IMG/VR virus record: IMGVR_UViG_3300033182_000980
Span: 310,001 to 374,000 of that record
Direction: 5' to 3' (one strand)
DNA: 64,000 bases
Both the position numbers and the translations under genes were made by a program. A model generated the notes under the pieces. It was not told where the DNA came from and made no database searches. It saw only the letters and a list, made by a program, of their open reading frames with translations. Each line of letters opens with the position of its first letter. The first letter of the stretch is position 1. Positions 24,718 through 51,364 of this stretch are shown one piece after another.

Positions 24718-24734
24718 ATAGGTAAGGGGTTACA
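24718..24734 (-). promoter_or_regulatory. Class-1 element
   Basis: tgtaaccccttacctat. Confidence 0.7.
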
Positions 24735-24822
24735 GGTTCTTCATACGATAGTAGCTGACGATGAAGAGTCCGATGAGGCAGATGCTGGCGACACCAGCGA
24801 TGTCTAGGATTGTTGAGATCAT
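24730..24822 (-). CDS. 30 aa single-TM peptide MISTILDIAGVASICLIGLFIVSYYRMKNL
   Basis: AAAGGAG RBS; its TAA stop lies inside the class-1 element. Confidence 0.55.
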   Translation of the reverse strand: MISTILDIAGVASICLIGLFIVSYYRMKNL

Positions 24823-24910
24823 TGTCTTTAGTCTCCTTTAGGCTGAACCCTTTCGGTTGTTCTGGTGTAGAATGATGATAATCATTAGTGCGAGAAGTTT
24901 AAGAGTCATG

Positions 24911-25120
24911 TTAGACCTTCCATACTTGCGTGAATCCAAATCGAAGCTCTAGTGCCTCTAGGAACGCACTTTGGCTCTTGGGTGAACCCTCCACATCAAC
25001 TTTCACATAAGGCTCGTAGGGAGTGCCTTCTCGTGTCTTTAAAGACACACCATGTGTCATGGCAATAGAGTGGAGCTGACACTCCTTAGAGTGTATGGTT
25101 CTGGTCATGGCGAGGGTCAT
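24911..25120 (-). CDS. Hypothetical protein
   Basis: 69 aa ORF in a co-oriented run. Confidence 0.5.
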   Translation of the reverse strand: MTLAMTRTIHSKECQLHSIAMTHGVSLKTREGTPYEPYVKVDVEGSPKSQSAFLEALELRFGFTQVWKV

Positions 25121-25134
25121 AAGGTTGCTCTCTC

Positions 25135-25671
25135 TTAGCGAGGGTTGTTGAACGCATCCCGATCCACCGTTTCGTCAAACTCGGTGATCTCGTGTCGGAT
25201 GTAGCGTGGGAGGTTCAAGTTAGTTTCGATGCAGTTGCGGATTGCTGTGAAGAGGTGCTTTGCCTCTTTGAGTGGATAGTGTCCATCAACGATGACACCC
25301 CGAACATATTGACGGCCATCCTCCGAGTAGAAGAAGGGAGTACCATCTCTACGAGTGAGCTTACCACTGTAGCTCTTAGGTCGGTTAGTGTTGTTTCCTG
25401 CGAGGCTCGCTTGGGTGCTAGGGATCATCCCCTTGCTACCGAACAGCACCTTATCGACATCAGCTTCGGTGCATTGAACACCTGCCTCATTGATGAGGGC
25501 AGTAGCCTGTGCGAGAGTGTTAGAGCTTGTGAAGGCTTGAAGGCGAGTCAGACGCTCCTGGAGGACTGCCTTGTAGGGGACGGTCATGTCGAGGATGACG
25601 CTGTAGAGTCCATCTCCATTGATGCGGCCGAGTTTGACTCTTGGATGATTGGTTGGGGTTGAGTTATTCAT
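25135..25671 (-). CDS. Hypothetical protein, possible distant relative of 26680/29388
   Basis: YVRGVIV and IETNLNLPRYIRH resemble HVRGIII and ISSELDL...WRQY; start moved to the ATG after AGGAG. Confidence 0.6.
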   Translation of the reverse strand: MNNSTPTNHPRVKLGRINGDGLYSVILDMTVPYKAVLQERLTRLQAFTSSNTLAQATALINEAGVQCTEADVDKVLFGSKGMIPSTQASLAGNNTNRPKSYSGKLTRRDGTPFFYSEDGRQYVRGVIVDGHYPLKEAKHLFTAIRNCIETNLNLPRYIRHEITEFDETVDRDAFNNPR

Positions 25672-25722
25672 CTTTAGTCTCCTATGAGAGTGAGTGGGCT
25701 TCATTGCCCTCGATACTAGGTT

Positions 25723-25739
25723 ATAGATAAGGGGTTACG
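25723..25739 (-). promoter_or_regulatory. Class-1 element
   Basis: cgtaaccccttatctat; contains the stop of the upstream gene. Confidence 0.75.
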
Positions 25740-26034
25740 CTTCTAGCTCATCAGCGAGCTGATCGTTCACGCTGTCGAAGAAAAAGTCGAGGCGAGTCCG
25801 ATCACTTTCGCTGACGGAGGCGGTCGTATTGATCACATCATAGAAGCATGGGGCATCGGGAGCTACCTCCTCCATGACGGAAACCATGTTGATGTACATC
25901 CCACGCTCTGCGATGTTGATCTCCTCCTCATTCTCCTCGGCCTCATCCATGAGGTCTTGGAGCTGATTGCGATAGCTCTGCATTTGAGTTTCGATCTGAC
26001 GAGAGAGCTGTAGTAGTTTCTCTTGGACTGTCAT
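25735..26034 (-). CDS. Acidic hypothetical protein
   Basis: 99 aa; RBS. Confidence 0.65.
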   Translation of the reverse strand: MTVQEKLLQLSRQIETQMQSYRNQLQDLMDEAEENEEEINIAERGMYINMVSVMEEVAPDAPCFYDVINTTASVSESDRTRLDFFFDSVNDQLADELEA

Positions 26035-26078
26035 GTCTGTTCTCCTTTACGAAGTTGGGTGTCGATTACATAGGTTAT

Positions 26079-26095
26079 ATGATTAAGGGGTTACA
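26079..26095 (-). promoter_or_regulatory. Class-1 element
   Basis: tgtaaccccttaatcat. Confidence 0.7.
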
Positions 26096-26148
26096 AGCTC
26101 TAAAGCCGACAGTTAGTTGGCAGTCGCTACCACCCTCGATACTAGACT

Positions 26149-26165
26149 ATAGATAAGGGGTTACA
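26149..26165 (-). promoter_or_regulatory. Class-1 element (no ORF before the next copy)
   Basis: Exact consensus. Confidence 0.75.
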
Positions 26166-26227
26166 CTTCCCCACGGTAGAAATGCACGAGTCAGAGAATA
26201 CGCAAAGTTTTCGAGGGTTTAGGTGTC

Positions 26228-26244
26228 TGTAACCCCTTATCTAT
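26228..26244 (+). promoter_or_regulatory. Class-1 element
   Basis: Exact consensus; divergent from 26149. Confidence 0.75.
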
Positions 26245-26302
26245 ATCATAGTATCGGGGCTGAATGACTCACCCCACCAACCACTCCCCAATGGAGAACA
26301 TC

Positions 26303-26563
26303 ATGAACGCACTTCCCCCCCTAACATACGCAGAAGCCTCACATGGTATCACCAAGATCGTCAGTGATCTTGGCTTCCCCCTCTTTATGGGTGAGGCAGA
26401 GCGTAAGCCTACTGTCAAGGCTGTACGCAAGCAAGTGAGTGCTTACTACAACCGACTCCACCGAGAGAACAAGCTCGACTGTCTCCATGCGTATGACGCA
26501 GAGAATAAGTCAGAGCTTCTTGAGGCGGCCGTGGCAGAGCTTCTTGAGCGAGTCGAGGGCTAA
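26303..26563 (+). CDS. Hypothetical protein
   Basis: Start moved to MNAL after a GGAG RBS. Confidence 0.6.
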   Translation: MNALPPLTYAEASHGITKIVSDLGFPLFMGEAERKPTVKAVRKQVSAYYNRLHRENKLDCLHAYDAENKSELLEAAVAELLERVEG

Positions 26564-26574
26564 GAGAGTCGGGT

Positions 26575-26591
26575 TGTAACCCCTTATCTAT
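26575..26591 (+). promoter_or_regulatory. Class-1 element
   Basis: Exact consensus. Confidence 0.75.
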
Positions 26592-26679
26592 AACCTAGTG
26601 TGAGAGGCTAGGGAAACAATCACCCAGCAATCATATAACTTAATCTGCAACCACACCATCTCTTGAAAGGAGAACCACC

Positions 26680-27285
26680 ATGCAGAACATCACAGCAACC
26701 CCAAACACAAGCATCACTTTCACCACAACCAAGTCGGGTCGTGCCGACTTGAAGAGGGACGGAGGCACAGTTCGTGGGCGACATACAGTCGAGGTGTCGA
26801 TGTTGGTCGGCACTGACCACAAGACCATCGCAGGTCTTGACCTCGCTAAAGTCGAGACTGCTGACCGAGCGAAGCTCAAGACAGCTCTTGAGGATCGGGG
26901 CTTGGTCTTTACTGACCTCGACTTTAACTTGGCTCTTGAGGGTGATCAACCTCGTAAGAAGGGTCTACTGACTGCGTTGCGTCAGTCGGCTACAGGATCG
27001 AACGATGACAACAAGCATCTTGAGGCTTACTCTGACCACCCATGTGGGGTCAAGGGAGTGAGTATCCATGACGGTACAGGTGATGTCCATGTGCGTGGGA
27101 TCATCATCGGAGAGAAGATCATCTCTGCTGACCCGAATGGTGATGCTCGCAAGGTGGCGAATGGGCTTCATGTCCAGCTCAAGAACGCAATCAGCTCCGA
27201 GCTTGATCTCACTTCACGAAAGTGGAGGCAGTACAAGCTACCAGCGTCAGCGACTGTAAATGGGATCGACAACCCAACTCTCTAA
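26680..27285 (+). CDS. Hypothetical protein, paralog of 29388
   Basis: DGGT.RGRHTV.V.MLVG, KHLEAY..HPCG, DPNGDAR and WRQYKLP shared. Confidence 0.75.
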   Translation: MQNITATPNTSITFTTTKSGRADLKRDGGTVRGRHTVEVSMLVGTDHKTIAGLDLAKVETADRAKLKTALEDRGLVFTDLDFNLALEGDQPRKKGLLTALRQSATGSNDDNKHLEAYSDHPCGVKGVSIHDGTGDVHVRGIIIGEKIISADPNGDARKVANGLHVQLKNAISSELDLTSRKWRQYKLPASATVNGIDNPTL

Positions 27286-27303
27286 GAGGTCGAGGGTATA
27301 CTC

Positions 27304-27320
27304 TGTAACCCCTTATTCAT
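27304..27320 (+). promoter_or_regulatory. Class-1 element
   Basis: tgtaaccccttattcat. Confidence 0.7.
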
Positions 27321-27363
27321 ATAACAGCATCAGCCAACTAACCACTCACTAAGGAGAACAAAA

Positions 27364-29345: not shown

Positions 29346-29387
29346 CTAGAAATCTTATAACTAACTTATCACAACTTTTATGGAGGC

Positions 29388-29984
29388 ATGGATATGGACA
29401 TCCAGCTAAACGACAATACGATCATTTCATTCACCACCCAGCGTGTAGGCAAGAAAGACCTCAAGAAAGATGGAGGCACACATCGTGGGCGACATACAGT
29501 CCGAGTGACAATGCTTGTTGGGTCTGACTATAAGACTGTCTCATCATTGGATTGGACGAAGGCGATGATGGCAGACGCAAACAAGTACGACTACATGGAG
29601 AAGATCAAGGAGCGAAATCCAGACCTTGAGTTCGACAAGCTGAACTTCAACATCGCATGGGATGATGTCATCATCTCACTACAGGACACTGCACATGGTG
29701 AGGAGAAGCGAAACAAGCACCTTGAAGCGTATGAGCCTCACCCATGTGGTATTCGAGGTGTCATGGTACACAAGGAGACAGGTGATGTTTACCTTACAGG
29801 CATCCAGGTGAAAGAGGAGATCGTTGAAGAAGATCCCAATGGAGATGCTCGACAGCTTCCTCGGACGATGAAGGCTCAACTCAAGCGTGAGGTTCAAAAG
29901 GTGCTGGAGCTGATGACAGGCAACTGGCGACAGTACAAGCTCCCAAAGGGTGTGACCATTAATGGGATTGACTCTAACGACTAG
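29388..29984 (+). CDS. Hypothetical protein, paralog of 26680
   Basis: Shared motifs listed under 26680. Confidence 0.75.
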   Translation: MDMDIQLNDNTIISFTTQRVGKKDLKKDGGTHRGRHTVRVTMLVGSDYKTVSSLDWTKAMMADANKYDYMEKIKERNPDLEFDKLNFNIAWDDVIISLQDTAHGEEKRNKHLEAYEPHPCGIRGVMVHKETGDVYLTGIQVKEEIVEEDPNGDARQLPRTMKAQLKREVQKVLELMTGNWRQYKLPKGVTINGIDSND

Positions 29985-33280: not shown

Positions 33281-33344
33281 GGTGAGTTCTCCTTAGTGGG
33301 AGTTAGTTGGGGGGGGGTTGGTCATCAACCCCTTACACTAGGAC

Positions 33345-33361
33345 ATAGATAAGGGGTTACG
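33345..33361 (-). promoter_or_regulatory. Class-1 element
   Basis: Consensus; contains the stop of 33357..33773. Confidence 0.75.
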
Positions 33362-33773
33362 ACCTCTTAAACTTGACTTGGTAGGTCTGCATCGTTTCGA
33401 GGTTAGGTACAGCGTAGAACGCTTCCTTGACCTCTTCGGGAGCATCCCGAAACTCGCTCCACCGGATCGTGTAGCTGTGTGCGATGTATTGGTCGAAGAG
33501 ATCCTCACCGATAGCGTCCTCGATGTCGTTGATGTCAACCGACTCTAGCTTGGGAGTCGGGGGTTGCTTCTCCACCCTTGTCGTGTACTTACCTGATGCA
33601 GACTCGATGATGAGATCTTGGTCATCAGCCATTTCGATCAGCTCGGACTTGAAGCTCTTAAGAGACTTGTTGAGCCTGTTCTGTGCCTCCCACAGTCGAG
33701 AGGCGGCTTCGGTTCGCTGATTGATGTTGAGGGTGGTGTCATTCATTTGGTTCATAAGTGCGTTGAAGTTCAT
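33357..33773 (-). CDS. Hypothetical protein
   Basis: 138 aa; GGAG RBS. Confidence 0.65.
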   Translation of the reverse strand: MNFNALMNQMNDTTLNINQRTEAASRLWEAQNRLNKSLKSFKSELIEMADDQDLIIESASGKYTTRVEKQPPTPKLESVDINDIEDAIGEDLFDQYIAHSYTIRWSEFRDAPEEVKEAFYAVPNLETMQTYQVKFKRS

Positions 33774-35241: not shown

Positions 35242-35295
35242 AGATTTGTCTCCTTTAGGAGTGAGTAAGTGAGCGATCTCACCTTTCAAGAGTTA

Positions 35296-35312
35296 ATAGA
35301 TAAGGGGTTACA
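35296..35312 (-). promoter_or_regulatory. Class-1 element
   Basis: Exact consensus. Confidence 0.75.
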
Positions 35313-35335: not shown

Positions 35336-36496
35336 TTAGAGGTCGATAGGGCAAACATCAGAGCTGGCTTGGCTTTGAGCGTCTACCACATCGGAGCGTA
35401 GGTAGGGGTCGATAGCACCCTCAAGAGCGTCTTGATTGTGCTTCTCGTTGAGATGCCCCTTGATGATCGCAAAGGATCGCTTGAGAGCCTTCTTAAAGTC
35501 GGTGATGCCTAAGTCCTCCATGACTGTAAGGCAAGCATGACCCCATTGCTTTGCTTGGCGTAGAGTGATCTCCATACCCATCGCTTGCTCCTCTGCTACC
35601 TTACGGATAGCTCGGTTGCAGTCCACCAAGAGCTTCACTTGGTCTTGATCAAACTGAGGAAACTCAGCCTGTACGACCATACGCTCAAACTTAGGTGTAG
35701 GAGGTGGAGCGTAGATACCGACACAGCGAGACAGGAGGCTTGAGTCTTTCATTTGGGTGATGTTCCCTCGACCACCATCCCCATCTGCACCACTATTGCT
35801 CGTAAAGTAGAAGCGAGTGTTAGGCAAGATCTCAAACATCTCACCTGTGATTGGGTTGGTCAGCTTCTCTTTGCCTAGCTCAAGAGCTTGGCGGAGGATC
35901 TCAAGCTGGTCGGGTGTAGCTCTGTCGTAGTCAGAGAAGAGGATGACTGCGGGTACTGTGATTGTAAGCATACCCTTGTCATTGACAACAGTATAGCCGA
36001 CTTTCTCCATGCCCTTGATTGCGTCTTGAAGCTGTTGCTCGGTTGCCCCTGTAAAGTCTCGCTTGCACGACACCCCACGACAAGCCTTGAGCAGATCACC
36101 CTCGACCTCTTTAGTCATTGTGCCACCTTTGCCATCACCTACGAGCGTGGTTCGGTAGATCCAGTCCACAGGATTTGTGCCTTGCTTAAAGGCAAAGCGA
36201 GCGAGAGGCAGATTGAAAGCGTGGCAAAACGCCTCGATTAAGATGTCCTTACCTGTACCAGCAGGCCCCGACACGATGAGGTGGTTGATTTTCAAGAAGA
36301 GAGTGCCATCTTGCATCCACCCCTCGCTCGTGTCCTCGACATAGTTGTCGGGACGCTTTGCAGGGTCGAAGCCAGCGTTGATGATCTCTAACGCTGTGAG
36401 TGGCGACATTGTTCTACGCACACCACAGAAGTAGTTGTAGGCGAGGGTATACAGTTCGGGTCGCTGACGATTTTTTTTCATGTTCATATCGACCAT
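35336..36496 (-). CDS. MoxR/CobS/CbbQ-type AAA+ ATPase
   Basis: Walker A GPAGTGKD, Walker B region ILFSDYDR, sensor TSNS, SLLSR, ITLRQ; next to a vWA gene. Confidence 0.8.
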   Translation of the reverse strand: MVDMNMKKNRQRPELYTLAYNYFCGVRRTMSPLTALEIINAGFDPAKRPDNYVEDTSEGWMQDGTLFLKINHLIVSGPAGTGKDILIEAFCHAFNLPLARFAFKQGTNPVDWIYRTTLVGDGKGGTMTKEVEGDLLKACRGVSCKRDFTGATEQQLQDAIKGMEKVGYTVVNDKGMLTITVPAVILFSDYDRATPDQLEILRQALELGKEKLTNPITGEMFEILPNTRFYFTSNSGADGDGGRGNITQMKDSSLLSRCVGIYAPPPTPKFERMVVQAEFPQFDQDQVKLLVDCNRAIRKVAEEQAMGMEITLRQAKQWGHACLTVMEDLGITDFKKALKRSFAIIKGHLNEKHNQDALEGAIDPYLRSDVVDAQSQASSDVCPIDL

Positions 36497-36539
36497 AAGG
36501 GTTCTCCTTGTCGAAGTAGGTTGCGTTGATGTAGTTCAC

Positions 36540-36556
36540 ATAAATAAGGGGTTACA
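36540..36556 (-). promoter_or_regulatory. Class-1 element
   Basis: tgtaaccccttatttat. Confidence 0.7.
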
Positions 36557-36620
36557 GGTTGGGCGAGTCGCCCGATTAGGTTATACAATCTCGTGAGAAA
36601 ATGTTCCCTCACACCATGAT

Positions 36621-36637
36621 ATAAATAAGGGGTTACA
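36621..36637 (-). promoter_or_regulatory. Class-1 element (no ORF before the next copy)
   Basis: tgtaaccccttatttat. Confidence 0.7.
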
Positions 36638-36701: not shown

Positions 36702-36718
36702 TGTAACCCCTTATCTAT
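36702..36718 (+). promoter_or_regulatory. Class-1 element
   Basis: Exact consensus. Confidence 0.75.
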
Positions 36719-36757
36719 ACCATCACATCAACCACCCACTCCAACAGGAGAACGCTT

Positions 36758-36952
36758 ATCAAATACCAAGTCATACTGAACAACACCCAAGTCCTCTCAA
36801 CACATAAAAATCGCAAGCTCGCTGAGAATGCACTCAGACGATGGATGAAGAAGCATGATGAGGAGCGTCAAGCCCACAACCGAATGATCAGTTGGGTTGA
36901 CCCAAAGCTCGTTCGCAATGTGAGTGGGGTCTACCACATCCGAGCAGTGTAA
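36758..36952 (+). CDS. 64 aa ORF with ATC at the start position (non-canonical start or pseudogene)
   Basis: AGGAGAACGCTT-ATC versus AGGAGAACGCTT-ATG at 42819 and 47121; TAA lies in the next element. Confidence 0.5.
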   Translation: MKYQVILNNTQVLSTHKNRKLAENALRRWMKKHDEERQAHNRMISWVDPKLVRNVSGVYHIRAV

Positions 36953-36964
36953 CCCCTTATCTGT
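36948..36964 (+). promoter_or_regulatory. Class-1 element
   Basis: tgtaaccccttatctgt. Confidence 0.7.
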
Positions 36965-37041
36965 AGACTAGTGTCGAGGGCAACTGTTCCTCACTTTCAT
37001 ATAATACACGAACACCCACTCACTCACCAAAGGAGATCCTT

Positions 37042-38201: not shown

Positions 38202-38218
38202 TGTAACCCCTTACTTAT
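38202..38218 (+). promoter_or_regulatory. Class-1 element
   Basis: tgtaaccccttacttat. Confidence 0.7.
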
Positions 38219-38244
38219 CCTACTCTTGAAAGGAGACTTATATC

Positions 38245-39057
38245 ATGCCTAATAAGTACGACACACAAGTCTTGTCCTCGATCAATCGGGGAACAAATAA
38301 AGTGAGGCGAGCCTTAGAGGTCGCCAATCAAAAGGTCGGTCAAAACTTTATCGGTGCTCGCTTGAACACTCGAAGCTCGGCTCTCGTGAATACGCTTACT
38401 AGCGTTCGCACTGGTCAGATCAATCGTGATCGCTACCATAAGATGTACCAGAAGCCACAAGTGAGAGCGGCGTTCTCGTTCGCTATAGACGGTAGCGACT
38501 CGATGAACTACAACACAGGGTGTCCGAGTGGCACTTACTGGAAAGAGTGTATCAGTCTCATACATGGGCTTCATACAGCTTGCCAAGGGATCGGGGTTGA
38601 CTCAACCTCTGCGTTGGTCATGTACACCTATGGTGATCGTGATGTGCCTATGGCAAGCTCTAGCTATAAGCCTGTGGCTAACATGATCAAAGGTCTTGGT
38701 GATAAATGGCAACGAGATAATCCCGATAAGCTACGCAAGAAGCGTTGCAATGGAGGAACATCAATCATCTGTTATGCCGAGACCGCACTAGACATGGTAT
38801 CTCAATCTGACGCTACCCATAAGATCGCCTTCTTCCTTACCGATGGTGAGGACTATGAAAAGGCTTACCTAGAGAGCATGAGACAGCAAGCTCAAGCTCA
38901 AGGCATCAAGCTAGTAGGGATCGGGCTAGGTGTGAGTGGTGATCGACTCCCTAATGGCATTAGTGGTGCTAATGCTCTTGAGATCGCACCTCGAATGATG
39001 GATCACCTAGAGAAAATCATCAAGTCCTCAACAGGTGTAGAGGCAAACGACAAATAA
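38245..39057 (+). CDS. von Willebrand factor A domain protein (CobT C-terminal-like)
   Basis: MIDAS DGSDS, GGT, FFLTDGE, LVGIGLG. Confidence 0.85.
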   Translation: MPNKYDTQVLSSINRGTNKVRRALEVANQKVGQNFIGARLNTRSSALVNTLTSVRTGQINRDRYHKMYQKPQVRAAFSFAIDGSDSMNYNTGCPSGTYWKECISLIHGLHTACQGIGVDSTSALVMYTYGDRDVPMASSSYKPVANMIKGLGDKWQRDNPDKLRKKRCNGGTSIICYAETALDMVSQSDATHKIAFFLTDGEDYEKAYLESMRQQAQAQGIKLVGIGLGVSGDRLPNGISGANALEIAPRMMDHLEKIIKSSTGVEANDK

Positions 39058-39830: not shown

Positions 39831-39847
39831 TGTAACCCCTTATTTAT
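39831..39847 (+). promoter_or_regulatory. Class-1 element
   Basis: tgtaaccccttatttat. Confidence 0.7.
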
Positions 39848-39903
39848 AGTCTAGTGTAAGGGTTGATTGACAGCCCACTAACCCACTCCCAAAGGAGAAA
39901 CAA

Positions 39904-39981: not shown

Positions 39982-39997
39982 AGTAAAGTCGGGGTTC

Positions 39998-40014
39998 TGT
40001 AACCCCTTATCTAT
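39998..40014 (+). promoter_or_regulatory. Class-1 element
   Basis: Exact consensus. Confidence 0.75.
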
Positions 40015-40069
40015 TACCTAACATGAGGAACGATCCTCACAACCACTCACTCTCATAGGAGAACAAGAC

Positions 40070-40372: not shown

Positions 40373-40382
40373 TGATCGGGGT

Positions 40383-40399
40383 TGTAACCCCTTATCTAT
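40383..40399 (+). promoter_or_regulatory. Class-1 element
   Basis: Exact consensus. Confidence 0.75.
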
Positions 40400-40451
40400 A
40401 ACCTAACATGAGGAACGATCCTCACAACCACTCACTCCCAAAGGAGACAAC

Positions 40452-40976
40452 ATGAACAGCGTAAACATCACAGCCGAAAACTTTATCCCAGCTCTCCTCG
40501 CACCCTTCGGTGGCAAGGACACCCACAACGAGGCAGGCGAGGCTCTCCCCTCAACCAGCTCTAAGGCTTGGAGCTTCACCCTCCACAATCGTGATCGCAA
40601 CACTCACCTCACCTTCAAGGCTCGCCGCCCGAAGGGGTGGACTGTAGAGTCTCCTGTCCTCATCGACCTCATGACAGGCAAGGACAACGATGCAGACTTT
40701 GGCTTCATCGGGAGCGTCAGTCCTCGTGGGTTCTACAAGCCAAGCCCCAAGAGCAAGGTAGACGCTGATCGCCTTGAGGTAGCCAATCGCACAATGGTTT
40801 GGCTTCTCACCAAGCTCAACAATGGGGTGGAGCTTCCCGATGCCCTAGAGATCAAGGGTGCTTCTAAGTGCTGTAGGTGTGCTAAGAAGCTCACCAACCC
40901 CGACAGCGTAGACGATGGGATGGGTCCAGTCTGTCGCCGTAAGGCTAACGAGAGCAAGGTTAGCCGAGGGGTCTAA
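40452..40976 (+). CDS. DUF6011-like Zn-finger protein, paralog of 50168
   Basis: CCRCAKKLTNPDSVDDGMGPVC. Confidence 0.75.
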   Translation: MNSVNITAENFIPALLAPFGGKDTHNEAGEALPSTSSKAWSFTLHNRDRNTHLTFKARRPKGWTVESPVLIDLMTGKDNDADFGFIGSVSPRGFYKPSPKSKVDADRLEVANRTMVWLLTKLNNGVELPDALEIKGASKCCRCAKKLTNPDSVDDGMGPVCRRKANESKVSRGV

Positions 40977-41472: not shown

Positions 41473-41489
41473 TGTAACCCCTTATCTAT
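41473..41489 (+). promoter_or_regulatory. Class-1 element
   Basis: Exact consensus. Confidence 0.75.
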
Positions 41490-41549
41490 GATCTAGTATC
41501 AAGGGTTGACTGGTTCAGCCCAACAGACTCCAGAAAGGGAGAACAAGAC

Positions 41550-42761: not shown

Positions 42762-42778
42762 TGTAACCCCTTACCTAT
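42762..42778 (+). promoter_or_regulatory. Class-1 element
   Basis: tgtaaccccttacctat. Confidence 0.7.
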
Positions 42779-42818
42779 GAGGGGGTATCAATCAACCACT
42801 CTGACAAGGAGAACGCTT

Positions 42819-44711: not shown

Positions 44712-44714
44712 GGG

Positions 44715-45289: not shown

Positions 45290-45898
45290 TTATGGGCGAG
45301 AGAGCTGACCCTCCCTTGAGCCGAAGTTAAACTCCTCGATGATCTCGTTGATCTTCTGTAGCTGTGTAGCTACCCACTCTTGGTTGCCTCCACCTTTAGT
45401 GTCGTAGTGGTGGTCGAGGAGGTGGAGGTTATTCGAGATGCTGAACAGCTCGGAGCTGAACTCGTAGTACGCTCTGTCATAGTCCTCGATGACCTGTGGA
45501 GGTGTCATGTCGGCCTCCCACGCAAACTCCATGAAGAGGTCATGTAGAGCGTCCTCTCGCTCGTCCTCATCTAAGGTCGGGTCAAGGGAAGCCTTAGCCG
45601 CTTCCTCATCGAACCATGATCGGTTAGTGTCCCAAGCGTAGACCCCCTCCATGACGCAGTGGTCGCACAGCTCCTCGTCATGGTCGTACTCGTCATAGCC
45701 GACACAGTACGAAACCATGTACCGTCCTGCACCCTCACACTCCCGACACATCTTAGCGTCAGCGTAGCGAGATGCTTGGAGCTTCGCCTTAGCATCCTGT
45801 AGCATTGCCTTGAGGGTGGGGAGGTTAGCGATGTCGCTCTCGATCTTCGAGGTGAGGACTCGCTCTGAGGTCTTGATGTCTTGTAGTGATGGCATCAT
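45290..45898 (-). CDS. CxxCxGxG...CxxC zinc-finger family protein
   Basis: CRECEGAG...CDHCVMEG. Confidence 0.65.
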   Translation of the reverse strand: MMPSLQDIKTSERVLTSKIESDIANLPTLKAMLQDAKAKLQASRYADAKMCRECEGAGRYMVSYCVGYDEYDHDEELCDHCVMEGVYAWDTNRSWFDEEAAKASLDPTLDEDEREDALHDLFMEFAWEADMTPPQVIEDYDRAYYEFSSELFSISNNLHLLDHHYDTKGGGNQEWVATQLQKINEIIEEFNFGSREGQLSRP

Positions 45899-45960
45899 AT
45901 TGATGTCTCCATTAGGAGTGAGTGAGGTGCGTGATGATTCTGCCCCTCTGACATTTAACT

Positions 45961-45977
45961 ATAGATAAGGGGTTACA
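45961..45977 (-). promoter_or_regulatory. Class-1 element
   Basis: Exact consensus. Confidence 0.75.
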
Positions 45978-45987
45978 GACTCAGGGA

Positions 45988-46170: not shown

Positions 46171-46182
46171 GTCGTTCTCCTA

Positions 46183-46464: not shown

Positions 46465-46495
46465 GTGTGTCTCCTAGTAGTGGTTGTGGTTGATG

Positions 46496-46512
46496 ATAGA
46501 TAAGGGGTTACA
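46496..46512 (-). promoter_or_regulatory. Class-1 element
   Basis: Exact consensus. Confidence 0.75.
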
Positions 46513-46566
46513 AATCGTGAGGGCTGACCCTCCATTATAGGGTTCGGGTTTCACCCCCCCTCGTTC

Positions 46567-46779
46567 CTACTTGCCTTTCTTGTCTTGCATCCACTGGGTG
46601 AAGTCGATGACCTCTTGCTTTGGGGCGTACAGCTCTTGGAGGAGCTTCGCCTTGATCGTGTCGATGTCAGACTCGCTGACCTCCCACACTCGATCCCCAT
46701 GAGAGGTTGGCTGGCCAGTCTTGATCGAGTGGGCCATCTCCTTCACGAAGTTGTTGATGTCTTCATTGGTCATACGCAT
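46567..46779 (-). CDS. Hypothetical protein
   Basis: 70 aa; RBS. Confidence 0.65.
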   Translation of the reverse strand: MRMTNEDINNFVKEMAHSIKTGQPTSHGDRVWEVSESDIDTIKAKLLQELYAPKQEVIDFTQWMQDKKGK

Positions 46780-46840
46780 AAGCGTTTATCCTTTGTCAAA
46801 GAGTGGTTGCGTGGGTGGTCGCTACCACCCACGCTAGTTC

Positions 46841-46857
46841 ATAGATAAGGGGTTACA
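46841..46857 (-). promoter_or_regulatory. Class-1 element with a perfect 11-bp hairpin downstream
   Basis: Exact consensus; gcgtgggtggt-agcg-accacccacgc. Confidence 0.75.
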
Positions 46858-47121
46858 TTAGTCTCGAACGATGCGTCCTAGTCGGTTCACCTTGATAACG
46901 AAGGTATCACCATGACGGTAAGCGTCATCACCTTTTCCGATGATGGCAGACTGTACAAGAAGGACATAGCGATGACCTTTTACAAGGTGGTCAAACATAT
47001 CTTTCCAAGGCAGTCTTGGTTGTGAGGATGAGGCTGATGTCAGACGAACACGCTTCACATCATAGGACACTTGAGCTTTAGCCCAAGCAAACACATCAGC
47101 TTTACTCGGCATAGAAGCCAT
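46858..47121 (-). CDS. Hypothetical protein
   Basis: 87 aa; RBS; stop abuts the element. Confidence 0.65.
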   Translation of the reverse strand: MASMPSKADVFAWAKAQVSYDVKRVRLTSASSSQPRLPWKDMFDHLVKGHRYVLLVQSAIIGKGDDAYRHGDTFVIKVNRLGRIVRD

Positions 47122-47188
47122 AAGCGTTCTCCTTTACGAAGTAGTGGTTTTCAAAGAAATAATCGTTGGTCGCTACCAACACTAGTCC

Positions 47189-47205
47189 ATAGATAAGGGG
47201 TTACA
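47189..47205 (-). promoter_or_regulatory. Class-1 element (back-to-back pair)
   Basis: Exact consensus. Confidence 0.75.
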
Positions 47206-47211
47206 GGCTGT

Positions 47212-47228
47212 CGTAACCCCTTATCTAT
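47212..47228 (+). promoter_or_regulatory. Class-1 element (back-to-back pair)
   Basis: cgtaaccccttatctat. Confidence 0.75.
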
Positions 47229-47295
47229 CTCTTAGTATCGAGGGTGGCAGAGGTCGCCCCACCAACCAAACTCTTTGACACTATGAAAGGAGGCT

Positions 47296-47577
47296 ATGCT
47301 TATGCGTATGCCTACTAAGTCCGACTACCTAGCCTACGCTGGCTACTCACGCTCTTACCAGGTTGAGGTCTGTGCTTGCGAGTACGACTCAAAGGGTATG
47401 ATCCTCGACTTCGCCACAGACGGATGGGAAGGGCGGCAGCTTCGCAATGTGCCAACTGACACACCCCTTCAGCTCAACATCATGGATCGCAATGGCGACA
47501 AGATGGAGGACATCGGGATCAGCATCAATGGTGAGACTGGTGAGATCGAGTGCAGTAGCAAGCACTTCGAGGGCTAG
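47296..47577 (+). CDS. Hypothetical protein
   Basis: 93 aa; AGGAGG RBS. Confidence 0.65.
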   Translation: MLMRMPTKSDYLAYAGYSRSYQVEVCACEYDSKGMILDFATDGWEGRQLRNVPTDTPLQLNIMDRNGDKMEDIGISINGETGEIECSSKHFEG

Positions 47578-47593
47578 GGTAGTCGGGGTATCG

Positions 47594-47610
47594 AGTAACC
47601 CCTTAATCAT
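47594..47610 (+). promoter_or_regulatory. Class-1 element
   Basis: agtaaccccttaatcat. Confidence 0.65.
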
Positions 47611-47650
47611 ATAACAACATCAACCACTTACTTCGTAAAGGAGACTGCCT

Positions 47651-47800: not shown

Positions 47801-47812
47801 GAAGGACTGCAC

Positions 47813-48424
47813 ATGACACTTACCCAAAAAGTAAATGGGGTTCGGAAGATGATCCCGACCCCTCATCACAAGACAGCGTATAAGACCAATGCGTCCGAGC
47901 AGTCTTGGCTTGCCCGACATCGTGATCTGTTCATCCAGCTTGCCGAGGAGGTGGGCTTCGAGGTGGGGGTGGGGAGTCGAGAGCTTCGGCTGACGCACGA
48001 CATCGGAAACTTCACCGTCCGATTCCATTGGGATCGGGAGTGGTCAACAATCGAGATGTACGGTCGCTGTGTTGATCGAACCACCCGAACCTACCACCAC
48101 TGGCGAGGTGATGCTAAACCCAAATCGCACAATGACGCACACCTTGGAAACTGGTTTCTCAAGAATGTGCGAGAGGACTGGATCGGGTCCAATATGCCAC
48201 CGATGGAACAGATCGGTCCGAGGGACGAGATCGTGTTTACCTCCACTCCGACAGGTGGGGGTCAAAGAACACGAGCAAAGGTCATCGAGCGAGGGGGCAA
48301 GTGGGGCAACAACTACTTCAAGGTCGAACTGCTAGAGGAGCGAGGGGTGAAGAAGATCAAGCCCATCGGTACGGTGGTGGAGGTACACTATAACTGCATC
48401 ATCCACCACGAGAGCAAAGCGTAA
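47813..48424 (+). CDS. Hypothetical protein
   Basis: 203 aa; TAA inside the next element. Confidence 0.65.
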   Translation: MTLTQKVNGVRKMIPTPHHKTAYKTNASEQSWLARHRDLFIQLAEEVGFEVGVGSRELRLTHDIGNFTVRFHWDREWSTIEMYGRCVDRTTRTYHHWRGDAKPKSHNDAHLGNWFLKNVREDWIGSNMPPMEQIGPRDEIVFTSTPTGGGQRTRAKVIERGGKWGNNYFKVELLEERGVKKIKPIGTVVEVHYNCIIHHESKA

Positions 48425-48436
48425 CCCCTTATCTAT
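48420..48436 (+). promoter_or_regulatory. Class-1 element
   Basis: cgtaaccccttatctat. Confidence 0.75.
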
Positions 48437-48474
48437 AGAACAGCATACAGCACCTCTCTTGAAAGGAGAACAGC

Positions 48475-48849: not shown

Positions 48850-48850
48850 T

Positions 48851-49228
48851 ATGAGTTGGCATCAACATATATCAGAGTTAGCAGACATGATCAATGAAGC
48901 CCACAGCCTACGGTTGACCGACAAACAAGAGGCTCTTAGTTGGGCTGAGGATTACATCGACCAATCCGAAACCTATGAGGAGATCAAAGACCTAGCCCAC
49001 CACTACGGGATAGGATCTGTCGAGGTCGCCCAACCCCAAAAGATAAAAGACCAGCTCAAAAAAATGATCGCTGATGAGGTGCTTGATTGGAAAGGGGCAG
49101 AGGCTGAAGAAGCTGAGGAGGAGGAGGCCGAGTGGGAAGTCGAGTCTACTTGCGATGACCAATGGGAGATCGAGTATGAGGACGAGGACGAGGCAGAGGA
49201 CTGCGAAGCATGGGAGGGCGAGCGATGA
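48851..49228 (+). CDS. Protein with a highly acidic C-terminus
   Basis: E/D/W-rich tail; start placed at MSWH. Confidence 0.6.
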   Translation: MSWHQHISELADMINEAHSLRLTDKQEALSWAEDYIDQSETYEEIKDLAHHYGIGSVEVAQPQKIKDQLKKMIADEVLDWKGAEAEEAEEEEAEWEVESTCDDQWEIEYEDEDEAEDCEAWEGER

Positions 49229-49824
49229 AAGCACTCATAGGGCTAACGCTCAAGAAGGCTAAGGAGGTCGCCAAGCAAGAGCTAGGGGTCAAGAGGATGG
49301 GCGATGCTCGCTTTCAGATGATCCTCGATCAAGGAGTCAAGAGAGGCGACTTCATCCTCGAAGGCGACATGATCAAAGACCCCAACATCAGCTCGACAGA
49401 CCCCCTCGACCTAGACCTGTTCGGTGAGATCGAAGAGGTCGAGGAGGAGGTCGAAGCATCACCCGACCCTGTGATCTCCACTAAGACCATCCACCCCGAA
49501 GTAGCCCACCTCGACCCCAAGCTGTCCAGCTCTGACCTACCACGAGCTGGTGATCTCTACCACTACAGATCCTACTCTGGTGAGGTCGTGCAAGGTGAGG
49601 TCAAGTCCACCATCTGCTTTGCCGAGTGTCAGAACCCCGATGGCACATGGCAGACAGTCGCCTTTCAAGACCTCTACCTCAAGAAGCGTGGAGTGCCTAA
49701 AGAGACGATGCTAAATCACCTCAACGCTTACTACCAGAATAATAATAATTTAAGAGCAGAGCATGATCAGCTCTTAAAAGAGATAAGCGAGCTTAAGGGG
49801 AAAGTGGACGAGGCGAAGGGGTAG
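49225..49824 (+). CDS. Hypothetical protein with a DLFGE acidic linker
   Basis: ATGA overlap; LDLDLFGEIEE. Confidence 0.65.
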   Translation: MKALIGLTLKKAKEVAKQELGVKRMGDARFQMILDQGVKRGDFILEGDMIKDPNISSTDPLDLDLFGEIEEVEEEVEASPDPVISTKTIHPEVAHLDPKLSSSDLPRAGDLYHYRSYSGEVVQGEVKSTICFAECQNPDGTWQTVAFQDLYLKKRGVPKETMLNHLNAYYQNNNNLRAEHDQLLKEISELKGKVDEAKG

Positions 49825-49825
49825 C

Positions 49826-49842
49826 TGTAACCCCTTATCTAT
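49826..49842 (+). promoter_or_regulatory. Class-1 element
   Basis: Exact consensus. Confidence 0.75.
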
Positions 49843-49895
49843 GTCCTAGTGTCGGGGCTTATGACCAGCCCCCCACTCACACTAGGAGAACCCCC

Positions 49896-50138
49896 ATGAA
49901 AGTCACAATCTATCCAGCCACTCAAGCCCCCCACACTGTAGTGGTCAGCACCTTCTCTGACCTACAGAAGCTCGTAGGTGGAGACATCCAGGTTGTTAAG
50001 GAGACGAGCCTTGGCGACCTACTCGTCAACGAAGAGGGCTTGCTCATGAACCTACCTCGCAATCAGCACTACCCCTTCCTCGTGGGTGATGTTGTCCTCG
50101 CACCCAAGGGCTGGGGCGACCTTCCCTACGGCGACTAA
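49896..50138 (+). CDS. DUF3846-like protein
   Basis: LQKLVGGDIQ, VNEEGLLMNLPRN, LVGDVVL. Confidence 0.7.
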   Translation: MKVTIYPATQAPHTVVVSTFSDLQKLVGGDIQVVKETSLGDLLVNEEGLLMNLPRNQHYPFLVGDVVLAPKGWGDLPYGD

Positions 50139-50167
50139 CCCACCAACACTCTGACAAGGAGAACCCC

Positions 50168-50701
50168 ATGCACCAGATCGTTGTTTCACCAGCCGACTTC
50201 CTCAACCACCTCAACGCTCCATTCTTCGGGGCGACCCATGACCAAGACGGCAACGCCCTCCCCTCCAAGCGTACCAAGGAGTGGGTGTTCACGCTCGGCA
50301 ACGAGCGTAAGGATAATCACCTCACCTTCAAGGCGACTCGCCACAAGGGGCAGACCGTCAATGATCCTGTCGAGGTCAGCCTCAATCTGCATGGGCTGAA
50401 CAGCATCCATGACCCTGTGTATCAGACCATCGGGACGGTGGACTCTAGGGGTACGCTCCGAGTCCAGTACGGACTCAACCTTAACCAGCCGAGACTCGAC
50501 ATCGGCTATGACACCCTCGTCTGGCTCTTAGGTGTGGCGACCGACCCTAGCTATGAGATGCCCGACCATCTCCAGATCATGTGTGAAGCACGATGTGCAA
50601 GATGCCGACTCCCCCTCACCAACCCTAACAGCCTCAAGTCAGCCATCGGCCCCATATGTCGTAGCAAGATCAACAAGAGCAAGCCAGCCAAGAGGCCATG
50701 A
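50168..50701 (+). CDS. DUF6011-like Zn-finger protein, paralog of 40452
   Basis: CARCRLPLTNPNSLKSAIGPIC; HLTFKA shared. Confidence 0.75.
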   Translation: MHQIVVSPADFLNHLNAPFFGATHDQDGNALPSKRTKEWVFTLGNERKDNHLTFKATRHKGQTVNDPVEVSLNLHGLNSIHDPVYQTIGTVDSRGTLRVQYGLNLNQPRLDIGYDTLVWLLGVATDPSYEMPDHLQIMCEARCARCRLPLTNPNSLKSAIGPICRSKINKSKPAKRP

Positions 50702-50805
50702 AAATTTACTCGCTCACCCCACTAAAATTTTTAGGGCGAGCCGAACAAAAATCTCAGCGTGTAGAAATCAGAGGGTCGGGGGGTGCTTCGCAGAAGCAGT
50801 CCGAG

Positions 50806-50822
50806 TGTAACCCCTTATCTAT
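50806..50822 (+). promoter_or_regulatory. Class-1 element
   Basis: Exact consensus. Confidence 0.75.
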
Positions 50823-50884
50823 AGTCTAGTGTGGGGAGGCTGACAGGCTGACCCAACCCCCCCTCTCGAACAAGGAGAACCGAC

Positions 50885-51346
50885 ATGACGATCACCAAGA
50901 CACACGCTGACATCAAGACCCTTGAGGCGAGCCTCGATCAGCTCAACGCACAGCTCAAGGCCGAGCACCCCAACCACTGCACCAAGTGTGGGGGTGTCGG
51001 GGGTGACATCTCCACCAGTGGCGATGGGTGGCACGAGCCGATCACAGATGACTGGAACGACTGCTCGGCTTGTCTCGGTCAGAGCCTCAACCCCCTCGAC
51101 CTCACCTCGACCATCTCCGATGAGGACGCAGAGGCCCATGTCGAGCGGATGACGGATGGGGAGCACCCCCTCCTCTCCAAGATCCATGAGGTCGAGCTTG
51201 AGCTTCACTACGAGCAGATGCACCTCGCACACCTTGAGATGGAAGAGGCCGAGCGAGAGTGGCTTGAGCGTGAACACGAGCGAGCGATGAGAGAGGCCGC
51301 CGAGGACGAGCAGAGCTACCTAGAGTTTTACTCCGACCTCAACTGA
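50885..51346 (+). CDS. CxxCxGxG...CxxC zinc-finger family protein
   Basis: HPNHCTKCGGVGG...CSACLGQSLNPLD. Confidence 0.7.
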   Translation: MTITKTHADIKTLEASLDQLNAQLKAEHPNHCTKCGGVGGDISTSGDGWHEPITDDWNDCSACLGQSLNPLDLTSTISDEDAEAHVERMTDGEHPLLSKIHEVELELHYEQMHLAHLEMEEAEREWLEREHERAMREAAEDEQSYLEFYSDLN

Positions 51347-51347
51347 G

Positions 51348-51364
51348 CGTAACCCCTTATCTAT
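51348..51364 (+). promoter_or_regulatory. Class-1 element
   Basis: cgtaaccccttatctat. Confidence 0.75.

What the first reader, a model, noticed from the sequence alone, without database searches (positions are those of the whole stretch)
24718..51364. Upstream genes terminate inside or against the class-1 element
Seen: the TAA of GTAAC is the stop codon of five ORFs (24730..24822, 25735..26034, 33357..33773, 36758..36952, 47813..48424). Three more stop 0-1 nt before the element (46858, 49824, 51346). Inference: units behave as abutting cassettes with the junction at GTAAC, loosely like stop codons in the integron attC inverse core, or deletions are anchored at the repeat.
Basis: partly seen in the sequence, partly recalled or inferred. 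Interest (0 to 1): 0.6.

Follow-up and report, generated by a model that had tools for sequence, protein, structure and literature searches.

The report
Phage promoter whose edge supplies stop codons
The repeated "class-1 element" is most likely the promoter of an uncultured 376-kb marine phage. Its fixed first letters GTAAC contain a TAA that tightly packed upstream genes use as their stop codon, and the same promoters mark the places where small gene cassettes are lost, swapped or flipped between related phages.

Summary
All five ORFs end on the TAA of GTAAC. One of them, 36758-36952, starts with ATC where a relative has ATG. The three other stops lie 1, 2 and 2 nt before GTAAC.

The element is GTAACCCCTTATCTATA: 33 copies in the window and about 67 in the 375,691-bp genome. 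It looks like a promoter. It points at a ribosome-binding site and start codon a median 67 nt downstream (65 of 68). It sits in 16 of 59 divergent gaps and 0 of 59 convergent gaps.

Sharing the TAA is typical of this promoter class across the whole clade. It occurs in 28 of 110 distinct co-directional junctions. Upstream genes are in frame with the TAA in 29 of 46 junction families (p=4e-5).

Orthologues show small changes at the junction: a 6-nt duplication or deletion, TAG-TAA tandem stops, and premature stops. Relatives and marine metagenome contigs differ by whole promoter-to-promoter units.

Best reading: genome compaction against an unchangeable promoter edge, plus recombination and deletion at the repeats. 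This resembles the PeSLs of T4-type phages and is not an integron. The polymerase that reads the promoter was not identified. Interest is moderate.

The parts
24717..24733 (-). class-1 element (promoter-like); its TAA (24730-24732) is the stop of ORF 24730-24822
   Evidence: junction conserved in two relatives
24730..24822 (-). 30-aa membrane-like ORF ending ...RMKNL* on the element's TAA
   Evidence: strong ribosome-binding site; orthologues in L053/G001 and L075/L062 share the TAA
25722..25738 (-). class-1 element; its TAA (25735-25737) is the stop of ORF 25735-26034
25735..26034 (-). 99-aa ORF ending ...DELEA* on the element's TAA; in G001/L053 the same end has its own TAA plus AGC before the element (GCGTAAAGCGTAAC)
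26078..26094 (-). class-1 element, subclass GTAACCCCTTAATCATATAAC (second TAA at positions 10-12); downstream member of an 'empty' tandem pair
   Evidence: a blastn match to G001 ends exactly here
26148..26164 (-). class-1 element with no gene before the next element; G001 has two genes (88 and 125 aa) here
26229..26245 (+). class-1 element, divergent partner of 26164
26576..26592 (+). class-1 element; upstream stop 12 nt away
27305..27321 (+). class-1 element; upstream stop 19 nt away
33344..33360 (-). class-1 element; its TAA (33357-33359) is the stop of ORF 33357-33773
33357..33773 (-). 138-aa ORF ending ...VKFKRS* on the element's TAA; L060/L066 have TCT TAG TAA (TAG overlapping the G, then the TAA in frame)
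35295..35311 (-). class-1 element; upstream stop 24 nt away
36539..36555 (-). class-1 element, tandem pair with 36636
36620..36636 (-). class-1 element, 'empty' upstream member of the tandem pair; divergent partner of 36703
36703..36719 (+). class-1 element ahead of ORF 36758-36952
36758..36952 (+). 65-codon ORF with ATC in the start position (ATG in G001), ending ...HIRAV* on the TAA of element 36949
36949..36965 (+). class-1 element (variant TCTGTA); its TAA (36950-36952) closes ORF 36758-36952
38203..38219 (+). class-1 element; upstream stop 15 nt away; the spacer carries a GGGGC arm
39832..39848 (+). class-1 element
39991..40006 (+). hairpin GGGGTTctGTAACCCC followed by TTATCTAT: the upstream arm pairs with the C-tract of element 39999 (terminator-like)
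39999..40015 (+). class-1 element of the 100-aa cassette; this cassette and the next are in swapped order in G001
40378..40391 (+). hairpin GGGGTTGTAACCCC overlapping element 40384
40384..40400 (+). class-1 element of the 174-aa (DUF6011) cassette; upstream stop 11 nt away
41474..41490 (+). class-1 element
42763..42779 (+). class-1 element
45960..45976 (-). class-1 element; upstream stop 11 nt away
46495..46511 (-). class-1 element; left end of the 345-nt unit missing in a marine metagenome contig (joint 46512->46858)
46840..46856 (-). class-1 element; stop of ORF 46858-47121 lies 1 nt upstream; right end of the unit missing in run X6
46858..47121 (-). 87-aa ORF, stop TAA 1 nt before the element; the whole cassette is absent in contigs of runs X1, X2, X3 and in G001
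47188..47204 (-). class-1 element, back-to-back with 47213 (8 nt apart)
47213..47229 (+). class-1 element; the cassette it drives (93 aa, 47296-47577) is inverted in G001
47595..47611 (+). class-1 element, subclass TTAATCATATAAC; upstream stop 17 nt away; GGGGT arm in the spacer
47813..48424 (+). 203-aa ORF ending ...HHESKA* on the TAA of element 48421; orthologues end ...GKA*, ...HNP* (TAA shared) or ...NTK TAG TAA
48421..48437 (+). class-1 element; its TAA (48422-48424) is the stop of ORF 47813-48424
49210..49824 (+). about 200-aa ORF, stop TAG, then ct, then GTAAC: the TAA is an in-frame second stop; G001 and L042 orthologues are 2 codons longer and end TAG overlapping the G
49827..49843 (+). 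class-1 element; the last codons AAG GGG TAG supply a GGGGT arm that can pair with ACCCC
50807..50823 (+). class-1 element
50885..51346 (+). 153-aa ORF, stop TGA, then gc, then GTAAC (TAA in frame); the same arrangement is in L094
51349..51365 (+). class-1 element
51979..51995 (+). degenerate class-1 element (GTAACCCCCTAGTTATA)
52507..52523 (+). class-1 element, last of the dense array
3822..3838 (-). class-1 element outside the array
6847..6863 (-). class-1 element outside the array; upstream stop 8 nt away

Best explanation
The class-1 element is the promoter of one temporal gene class, probably early, in an uncultured marine huge phage. Its core is 17 contiguous nt, GTAACCCCTTATCTATA, preceded by a pyrimidine. 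Nearly every small orphan gene (no known relatives) in the 28-kb array has its own copy.

Selection for promoter function holds the motif fixed. Its first five letters contain TAA, so that TAA is a stop codon that cannot drift.

The genome is under strong compaction. Deletions between a gene's end and the next promoter are tolerated until they reach the promoter edge. A gene that loses its own stop in the TAA frame ends on the promoter's TAA with no extension. That state has no spacer left to change, so it is 'sticky'. Leaving it by a nonsense mutation or a 3n insertion keeps the frame. This explains both the spike at the shared TAA and the excess of upstream genes in frame with it.

The repeats are also where rearrangements end. 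Recombination or slippage between copies removes, inverts or reorders promoter-to-promoter units. Deletions that would cut into a promoter are purged. Each gene therefore carries its junction with the next promoter along.

Shown: the anatomy, the statistics, the junction variants and the unit-sized rearrangements.
Inferred: promoter activity, the temporal class, the polymerase, and neutrality of the frame bias.
For: Promoter anatomy:
- 65 of 68 copies are followed by a co-oriented ribosome-binding site and start codon, a median 67 nt from the G (60 lie within 39-104 nt).
- 16 of 59 divergent intergenic regions carry one and 0 of 59 convergent regions do.
- Conservation is sharp from -1 to 17 and there is no sigma-70 -35/-10 layout.
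- The exact 16-mer recurs many times in related IMG/VR contigs and is absent from the more distant LR745208.1.

The TAA is conserved whatever lies upstream: 67 of 68 copies here and 158 of 170 distinct contexts in the clade keep GTAAC.

Compaction: 25.5% of co-directional gene pairs without an element overlap, and a further 25.5% are 0-20 nt apart.

Spike and frame bias:
- Gap -4 in 8 (+1) of about 39 junctions here and in 28 of 110 across the clade.
- 29 of 46 junction families are in the TAA frame, p=3.6e-5.
- Without the -4 families the count is 14 of 31, p=0.12.

Stickiness: 18 of 27 orthologue pairs keep their state in families with a -4 member, against 8 of 32 in the others.

Junction transitions seen: GCGTAA|AGCGTAAC (6 nt), TCT TAG TAA, AAG TAG TAA, GGG TAG CTG TAA.

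Rearrangements ending at elements:
- A swapped cassette pair, an inverted cassette, and absent or extra cassettes in G001.
- A metagenome joint 46512->46858 that skips exactly 345 nt, the element-to-element distance.
- The 46858-47121 cassette is missing in three other runs.
Against: - No transcription start has been mapped and no RNA run holds the phage.
- No polymerase or sigma factor that could read the motif was found.
- Genes ending on the element's stops in the other two frames are much rarer (3 families against 15), although the motif often offers stops there. The sticky-boundary model accounts for this only if C-terminal extensions of 3-7 or more residues are usually harmful.
- The stickiness contrast at family level is weak (Fisher p=0.09).
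- Gene calls come from my own simple caller.
Confidence: 0.7

Rival explanations
1. The TAA, together with the frequent stops in the other two frames at positions 10-12, 16-18 and 21-23, is selected as a stop signal in its own right. The element would then be an all-in-one cassette boundary: stop codon, terminator arm, promoter and recombination site. Any gene joined to any copy by recombination would be correctly terminated.
For: - Frame bias of 29 of 46.
- TAG-TAA and TGA..TAA tandem stops recur in orthologues.
- About half of the copies have stops in the other two frames within 23 nt.
- A subset forms the hairpin GGGGTTnnGTAACCCC followed by a U-rich tail.
- Unit-sized cassette exchange is seen.
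Against: - The TAA is just as invariant in copies with no co-directional upstream gene.
- Its conservation is no higher than that of neighbouring core positions.
- Once the -4 families are removed, the remaining frame bias is not significant.
- The stops in the other frames are hardly used.
Confidence: 0.17
2. The element is a site for a site-specific recombinase, and the units are integron-like cassettes. The stop codon sits in the site as it does in the attC inverse core.
For: - Cassette-sized presence/absence differences with ends at the element.
- TAAC resembles the end of the attC inverse core RYYYAAC (my own knowledge).
- One weak tyrosine-recombinase-like match in the genome.
Against: - No inverted-repeat partner or conserved second half-site.
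- Copies lie on both strands and always point at a start codon.
- Back-to-back divergent pairs occur.
- Each unit has its own copy ahead of the gene, not a single array promoter.
- The recombinase-like ORF is about 270 kb away and scores only 25-28 bits.
- Some deletions have only one end at an element.
Confidence: 0.03
3. Chance or an annotation artefact: short open frames that merely happen to be closed by the motif's TAA.
For: - Two of the ORFs sharing the TAA in this genome are very short: 30 aa at window 24730-24822 and 27 aa upstream of the element at genome position 176149.
- One lacks a canonical start.
Against: - The ORFs have strong ribosome-binding sites and are conserved with the same C-termini in relatives that are 75-90% identical.
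- The result holds for proteins of 50 aa or more and for families seen in 2 or more relatives.
- p-values range from 2e-3 to 4e-5.
Confidence: 0.05

Closest known systems
PeSLs (promoter-early stem-loops) of T4-type phages (Arbiol et al. 2010, PMC2839356; Comeau et al. 2014, PMC4122927)
   Same: - Repeated intergenic promoter motifs concentrated in hyperplastic regions full of small orphan genes.
- The motif begins at the stop codon of the upstream gene (legend of fig. 2 in PMC2839356).
- A G-tract/C-tract stem-loop is associated with the promoter.
- Recombination between copies gives insertions, deletions and replacements of single-gene units between close relatives.
   Different: - This promoter is a contiguous 17-mer with no sigma-70 -35/-10 layout.
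- The stop codon lies inside the invariant motif rather than in an AT-rich leader.
- The stem-loop is present in only about 12-16 of 68 copies and uses the promoter's own C-tract as one arm.
- The phages are unrelated huge marine phages.
- Mini-circles were not tested.
Promoters of T7-group single-subunit RNA polymerases (my own knowledge)
   Same: - One contiguous, highly conserved block of about 17-23 bp ending in CTATA just before the presumed start.
- Dozens of near-identical copies.
- Copies are packed against, or overlap, the ends of upstream genes.
- Structured 5' leaders.
   Different: - No T7-like polymerase gene was detected: PF00940 gave nothing, and the only RxxxK(6-8)YG motif is in the DNA polymerase.
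- The start site is unknown.
Integron attC sites
   Same: Cassette ORFs often end inside the first part of the site, and the units are gained and lost one at a time.
   Different: - No palindromic attC architecture.
- No adjacent integrase.
- Cassettes carry their own promoters and lie in both orientations.
Overlapping stop/start junctions (ATGA, TAATG) in compact prokaryotic and phage genomes
   Same: Two adjacent functional signals share nucleotides. In this genome 10% of co-directional gene pairs overlap by exactly 4 nt, the same geometry as the stop shared with the promoter.
   Different: Here the partner is a transcription signal, not a start codon, so translational coupling is not involved.

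Membership tests
PeSL (T4-type promoter-early stem-loop) | sigma-70-like -35/-10 early promoter with an AT-rich upstream region | tested here: not met
   The logo shows one contiguous block from -1 to 17 and nothing upstream. Sigma-70-like sites are not enriched: 13 found against 18.6 expected.
PeSL (T4-type promoter-early stem-loop) | stem-loop (terminator or attenuator) as part of the motif | tested here: inconclusive
   The hairpin GGGGTTnnGTAACCCC followed by TTATCTAT is found at 39991-40006, 40378-40391 and in about 12-16 of 68 copies. Most copies lack the upstream arm.
PeSL (T4-type promoter-early stem-loop) | flanks orphan genes in hyperplastic regions | tested here: met
   There are 31 copies in window 24.7-52.5 kb. 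Cassette genes have almost no Pfam or PHROGs matches. Gene content differs between relatives.
PeSL (T4-type promoter-early stem-loop) | recombination between copies produces indels or replacements of the enclosed gene | tested here: met
   A 345-nt skip equals the element-to-element distance. G001 shows absent, extra, swapped and inverted cassettes with blastn match ends at elements.
PeSL (T4-type promoter-early stem-loop) | excised mini-circles | not testable with these tools
   This needs inverse PCR or raw long reads from an infection.
Integron (attC cassette array) | attC with paired inverse-core and core sites forming an imperfect palindrome | tested here: not met
   No conserved inverted partner appears in the logo from -40 to +70 or in the folds.
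Integron (attC cassette array) | integron integrase next to the array | tested here: not met
   The only PF00589 match is at G000:62279-62695 (25.4 bits), about 270 kb from the array.
Integron (attC cassette array) | mostly promoterless cassettes in one orientation behind a common promoter | tested here: not met
   Every unit has its own element ahead of the gene, on both strands.
T7-type single-subunit RNA polymerase promoter | contiguous conserved block of about 17-23 bp at a fixed distance from the start site | tested here: inconclusive
   The contiguous block is present. The start site has not been mapped because no RNA data exist.
T7-type single-subunit RNA polymerase promoter | cognate single-subunit polymerase encoded by the phage | tested here: not met
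   A six-frame PF00940 search found nothing, although its controls could not ring either. The motif B regex matches only the family-A DNA polymerase. PHROGs, Pfam and PDB searches of the large proteins found no RNA polymerase.

The most novel reading that the evidence does not exclude
In this clade of uncultured marine huge phages, a 17-nt promoter read by a so far unrecognisable polymerase has evolved into a complete gene-cassette 'punctuation mark'. It would provide a built-in stop codon or codons, one arm of a terminator hairpin, the promoter, and the homology used for cassette exchange. The in-frame bias of upstream genes would then reflect selection for exchangeable, self-terminating cassettes rather than neutral compaction.
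Probability: 0.17. Interest if true: 0.6.

Novelty: new variant of a known kind. Interest (0 to 1): 0.4.

Why it matters
- It provides a promoter consensus and a map of about 67 transcription units for a clade of 200-400-kb marine phages. These phages have no cultured member and almost no annotatable genes.
- It shows that promoter-bounded cassette shuffling, described for the sigma-70-type PeSLs of T4-like phages, also operates with a quite different, phage-specific promoter.
- For annotation, short ORFs that end on GTAAC are real genes, and the element marks the gene boundaries.
- The motif is also a handle for finding the unknown polymerase or specificity factor that reads it.

Tried and rejected
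Searches for the polymerase, all negative:
- Six-frame searches for PF00940, PF00623, PF00562 and PF04542.
- Pfam and PHROGs scans of about 35 large proteins. These gave terminase with an intein, portal, tail and sheath proteins, helicases, family-A DNA polymerase and ribonucleotide reductase, but no RNA polymerase.
- The 3049-aa ORF against PDB sequences and the ESM Atlas (one search failed on length).
- Regex searches for DxDGD-type and T7 motif A/B/C signatures.

Expression evidence: no RNA run holds the phage. Only marine DNA contigs hold it, at small word shares, so no start site could be mapped.

Other searches that found nothing:
- Megablast of 20 kb against GenBank phages.
- The nearest record, LR745208.1 (DNA polymerase 45% identical), lacks the motif.
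- A literature search for the motif string returned only unrelated primer and oligo matches.

Readings rejected:
- A sigma-70 reading, on spacing and on the absence of enrichment.
- An ECF-like reading (GTAAC as the -35 box), because positions 6-17, which would be the spacer, are the most conserved.
- The integron reading (see the membership test).

Other points:
- Seven IMG/VR loci with a single 16-mer match and no homology to the genome (L025, L026, L047, L063, L064, L068, L100) are treated as chance matches.
- I did not simulate the neutral indel model. The parameters would have been guesses.

Full report
**Observation.** The window is positions 310,001-374,000 of a 375,691-bp IMG/VR virus record.
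- ORF 36758-36952 has ATC where a start codon should be. It aligns with a 55-aa gene of a relative that has ATG there and the same ...AV* end on the element's TAA. It is a real gene family, perhaps with a damaged or non-canonical start in this genome.
- The other three stops are 1 nt (46858), 2 nt (49824) and 2 nt (51346) before the G. The two 2-nt cases are in frame with the TAA.

**What the element is.** With up to 3 mismatches there are 68 copies in the genome, one of which (53585) is probably false.
- The logo is a sharp contiguous block: a pyrimidine at -1, then GTAACCCCTTA-t-c-T-A-T-a, with weaker conservation at positions 20-32 and none upstream.
- 65 of 68 copies are followed by a co-oriented AAGGAG-type ribosome-binding site and start codon, a median 67 nt from the G.
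- 16 of 59 divergent intergenic regions carry a copy, often as back-to-back pairs such as 47204(-)/47213(+). None of 59 convergent regions does.
- Many leaders begin with a hairpin.
- Sigma-70-like sites are not enriched.
- This is the anatomy of a phage-specific promoter. Its form resembles T7-group promoters (contiguous, ending CTATA; my own knowledge).
- Promoter activity, start site and temporal class are inferred, not shown. The driven genes are small orphan genes, which suggests an early class.

**Context.** The phage has no close GenBank relative. The best match is the 485-kb uncultured phage LR745208.1, whose DNA polymerase is 45% identical. That phage lacks the motif. The exact 16-mer occurs many times in related IMG/VR contigs that are 73-93% identical to this genome. 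Marine metagenomes hold relatives.

**Is it more than chance?**
- With my own gene caller, about 39 elements in this genome have a co-directional upstream gene. 8 of these genes, plus the ATC ORF, end on the element's TAA. 6 more stop 1-3 nt before the G. The rest are spread from 6 to 365 nt.
- Outside the window the proportion is the same (4 of 15). The pattern belongs to the promoter class, not to this locus.
- Across the genome and all fetched relatives there are 110 distinct co-directional junctions. 28 share the TAA, and no other single distance exceeds 6.
- Grouped into 60 upstream-gene families, 46 lie within 30 nt of the element. 29 of these are in frame with the TAA, against one third expected (p=3.6e-5). 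The p-value stays between 2e-3 and 3e-4 after restricting to proteins of 50 aa or more and/or families seen in 2 or more relatives.
- Without the families that share the TAA, the bias is 14 of 31 (p=0.12).
- Stops deeper in the element are rare. Two families end at positions 10-12, in the subclass ...CCTTAA.... One ends at positions 21-23.

**Orthologous junctions.**
- The 30-aa gene ends ...NL* on the TAA in three lineages.
- The 138-aa gene ends ...KRS* on the TAA here and in G001. L060/L066 read TCT TAG TAA instead.
- The 203-aa gene ends on the TAA in three lineages. L042/L054 read AAG TAG TAA.
- The 99-aa gene shares the TAA here. G001/L053 read GCGTAA-AGC-GTAAC, a 6-nt direct repeat whose loss gives the window's state.
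- The roughly 200-aa gene ends GGG TAG ctG TAA here and in L094. In G001 and L042 it is two codons longer and ends with TAG overlapping the G.
- C-termini therefore vary by only 0-3 residues and the frame relative to the TAA is kept.
- Families with a shared-TAA member keep their state in 18 of 27 orthologue pairs. Families with a spacer keep it in 8 of 32, because their spacers carry small indels in nearly every comparison.

**Cassettes.** I compared window 22-54 kb with the homologous 40 kb of G001 (IMG/VR 3300025098_000012, about 80% identical) and with G003.
- Synteny is conserved overall, but there are several local differences.
- The 100-aa and 174-aa cassettes at 39999 and 40384 are in swapped order.
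- The 93-aa cassette at 47213 is inverted relative to both flanks.
- The cassettes at 46511-47204 and 49827-50807 are absent from G001.
- G001 has four extra cassettes.
- Several cassette genes have paralogues within the array.
- About 12 of 40 blastn match ends fall within about 10 nt of an element or inside one, although elements make up only about 3-4% of the region.
- The 'empty' tandem promoters at 26164/26094 correspond to two genes in G001. That deletion runs from the leader of one gene to exactly the edge of the next element.
- Independent marine contigs confirm unit-sized changes. In run X6 the joint 46512->46858 skips 345 nt, exactly the distance between the elements at 46511 and 46856. 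It leaves the stop of the 87-aa gene 3 nt from the surviving element. In runs X1, X2 and X3 the 87-aa cassette itself is missing.
- One upstream gene (...DDFRV*) is joined through the TAA to three different downstream sequences in three contigs, one of which has the element truncated after position 11.

**Mechanism.** The TAA is conserved in copies with and without an upstream gene: 67 of 68 copies here, and GTAAC in 158 of 170 distinct contexts across the clade. So it is held by promoter function.
- The genome is compact. A quarter of ordinary co-directional gene pairs overlap, and 10% overlap by exactly 4 nt.
- Deletional compaction against a fixed promoter edge that contains TAA gives a state with no spacer. 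This state is hard to leave, and the usual exits from it preserve the frame.
- That accounts for the spike, the tandem stops and the frame bias. I give this reading 0.7.
- The main rival is direct selection for a built-in stop that makes cassettes exchangeable. It is not excluded (0.17). The scarcity of genes ending on the motif's stops in the other two frames is its best argument.
- An integron-like site-specific system fails its defining tests.

**Comparison with known systems.** The closest known system is the PeSL of T4-type phages (PMC2839356, PMC4122927).
- PeSLs are repeated early-promoter/stem-loop motifs that begin at the upstream stop codon, flank orphan genes in hyperplastic regions and mediate modular shuffling.
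- The present element works like a PeSL but is not one by sequence. It has no sigma-70 layout, the stop lies inside the invariant motif, and a stem-loop is present only in a subset.
- In that subset an upstream (TC)GGGGTT pairs with the promoter's own AACCCC and is followed by TTATCTAT.

**Unresolved.** The enzyme that reads the motif is unknown. No T7-like or multisubunit polymerase and no sigma factor was detectable. The giant 3049-aa ORF next to the array has no match anywhere.

Noticed in passing
whole genome G000 (window included): Extreme avoidance of short palindromes (observed/expected). ACGT 0/~1300 and GCGC 0/~890 in 375,691 bp. CGCG 64/721, CCGG 112/730, AATT 414/1873. Zero copies of ACATGT, AGTACT, CCATGG, CTCGAG, GCATGC, GCTAGC, CYCGRG and RCATGY. 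AAGCTT 4/379, CGATCG 2/160, GCWGC 21/449. This looks like very broad restriction-site avoidance.
   Followed up: partly
whole genome; window: GTAAC/GTTAC is itself depleted outside the promoters. There are 162 copies, 68 of them in elements, against about 460 expected. In the window, 43 were found against 90 expected, and 33 of those are elements. GTSAC is also at 0.45 of expectation. The cause could be GTNAC restriction avoidance or avoidance of promoter-like seeds.
   Followed up: partly
window 39991-40006, 40378-40391; also spacers before 26229, 26576, 27305, 38203, 39832, 47595, 49827: An upstream motif (TC)GGGG(T/C)T pairs with the element's AACCCC to give a hairpin followed by TTATCTAT. 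This would be a terminator-like structure sharing its descending arm with the promoter. TCG(A)GGG is also fixed at element positions 26-32 in 10 copies.
   Followed up: partly
window 26078-26094, 47595-47611, 27305-27321; G000 positions 215438, 265158: A subclass of the element, GTAACCCCTTA(A/T)TCATATAAC, with a one-base-longer 3' half. In the TTAA variants it has a second TAA at positions 10-12. That second TAA is used as a stop by the inverted 94-aa gene in G001 and by one gene in L094.
   Followed up: partly
window 26094-26164 and 36555-36636: Tandem promoters 70 and 81 nt apart with no gene between them. At the first pair G001 has two genes (88 and 125 aa), so this is a deletion scar that kept both promoters.
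   Followed up: yes
window 36758-36760: ATC occupies the start position of a conserved small gene, where the relative G001 has ATG. This is either a non-canonical start or a recently silenced gene.
   Followed up: partly
window 13163-22312 (-): A 3049-aa ORF beside the promoter array has no match in Pfam, PHROGs or PDB sequences. An ESM Atlas search of residues 700-2700 also found nothing. Its GC skew is strongly negative.
   Followed up: partly
window 50532-50810 (+): A 92-codon GTG-started frame ends on the TAA of element 50807 and overlaps the called 177-aa gene 50168-50701. Relatives' contigs carry 1-nt deletions at 50704 and 50724. The true gene end here is uncertain.
   Followed up: no
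window 45290-45898(-), 50885-51346, 51431-51829; 40452-40976 and 50168-50701; 26680-27285 and 29394-29984: Paralogous cassette genes lie within the array: one family in three copies and two families in two copies. This points to duplication of promoter-gene units.
   Followed up: partly
L009:3255-7340 (-) and L013:6441-9101 (+) (G000 positions 3255-7340 and 86441-89101): The large terminase subunit and the ribonucleotide reductase large subunit both carry intein/LAGLIDADG insertions.
   Followed up: no
window 35336-36496 (-) and 38245-39057 (+): An AAA_5 (MoxR/dynein-like) ATPase and a von Willebrand A domain protein are each driven by a class-1 element. They are among the few cassette genes with any family match.
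   Followed up: no
G000:62279-62695 (L107): A single weak tyrosine-recombinase-like domain (25.4 bits) sits in a 491-aa frame, far from the array.
   Followed up: no
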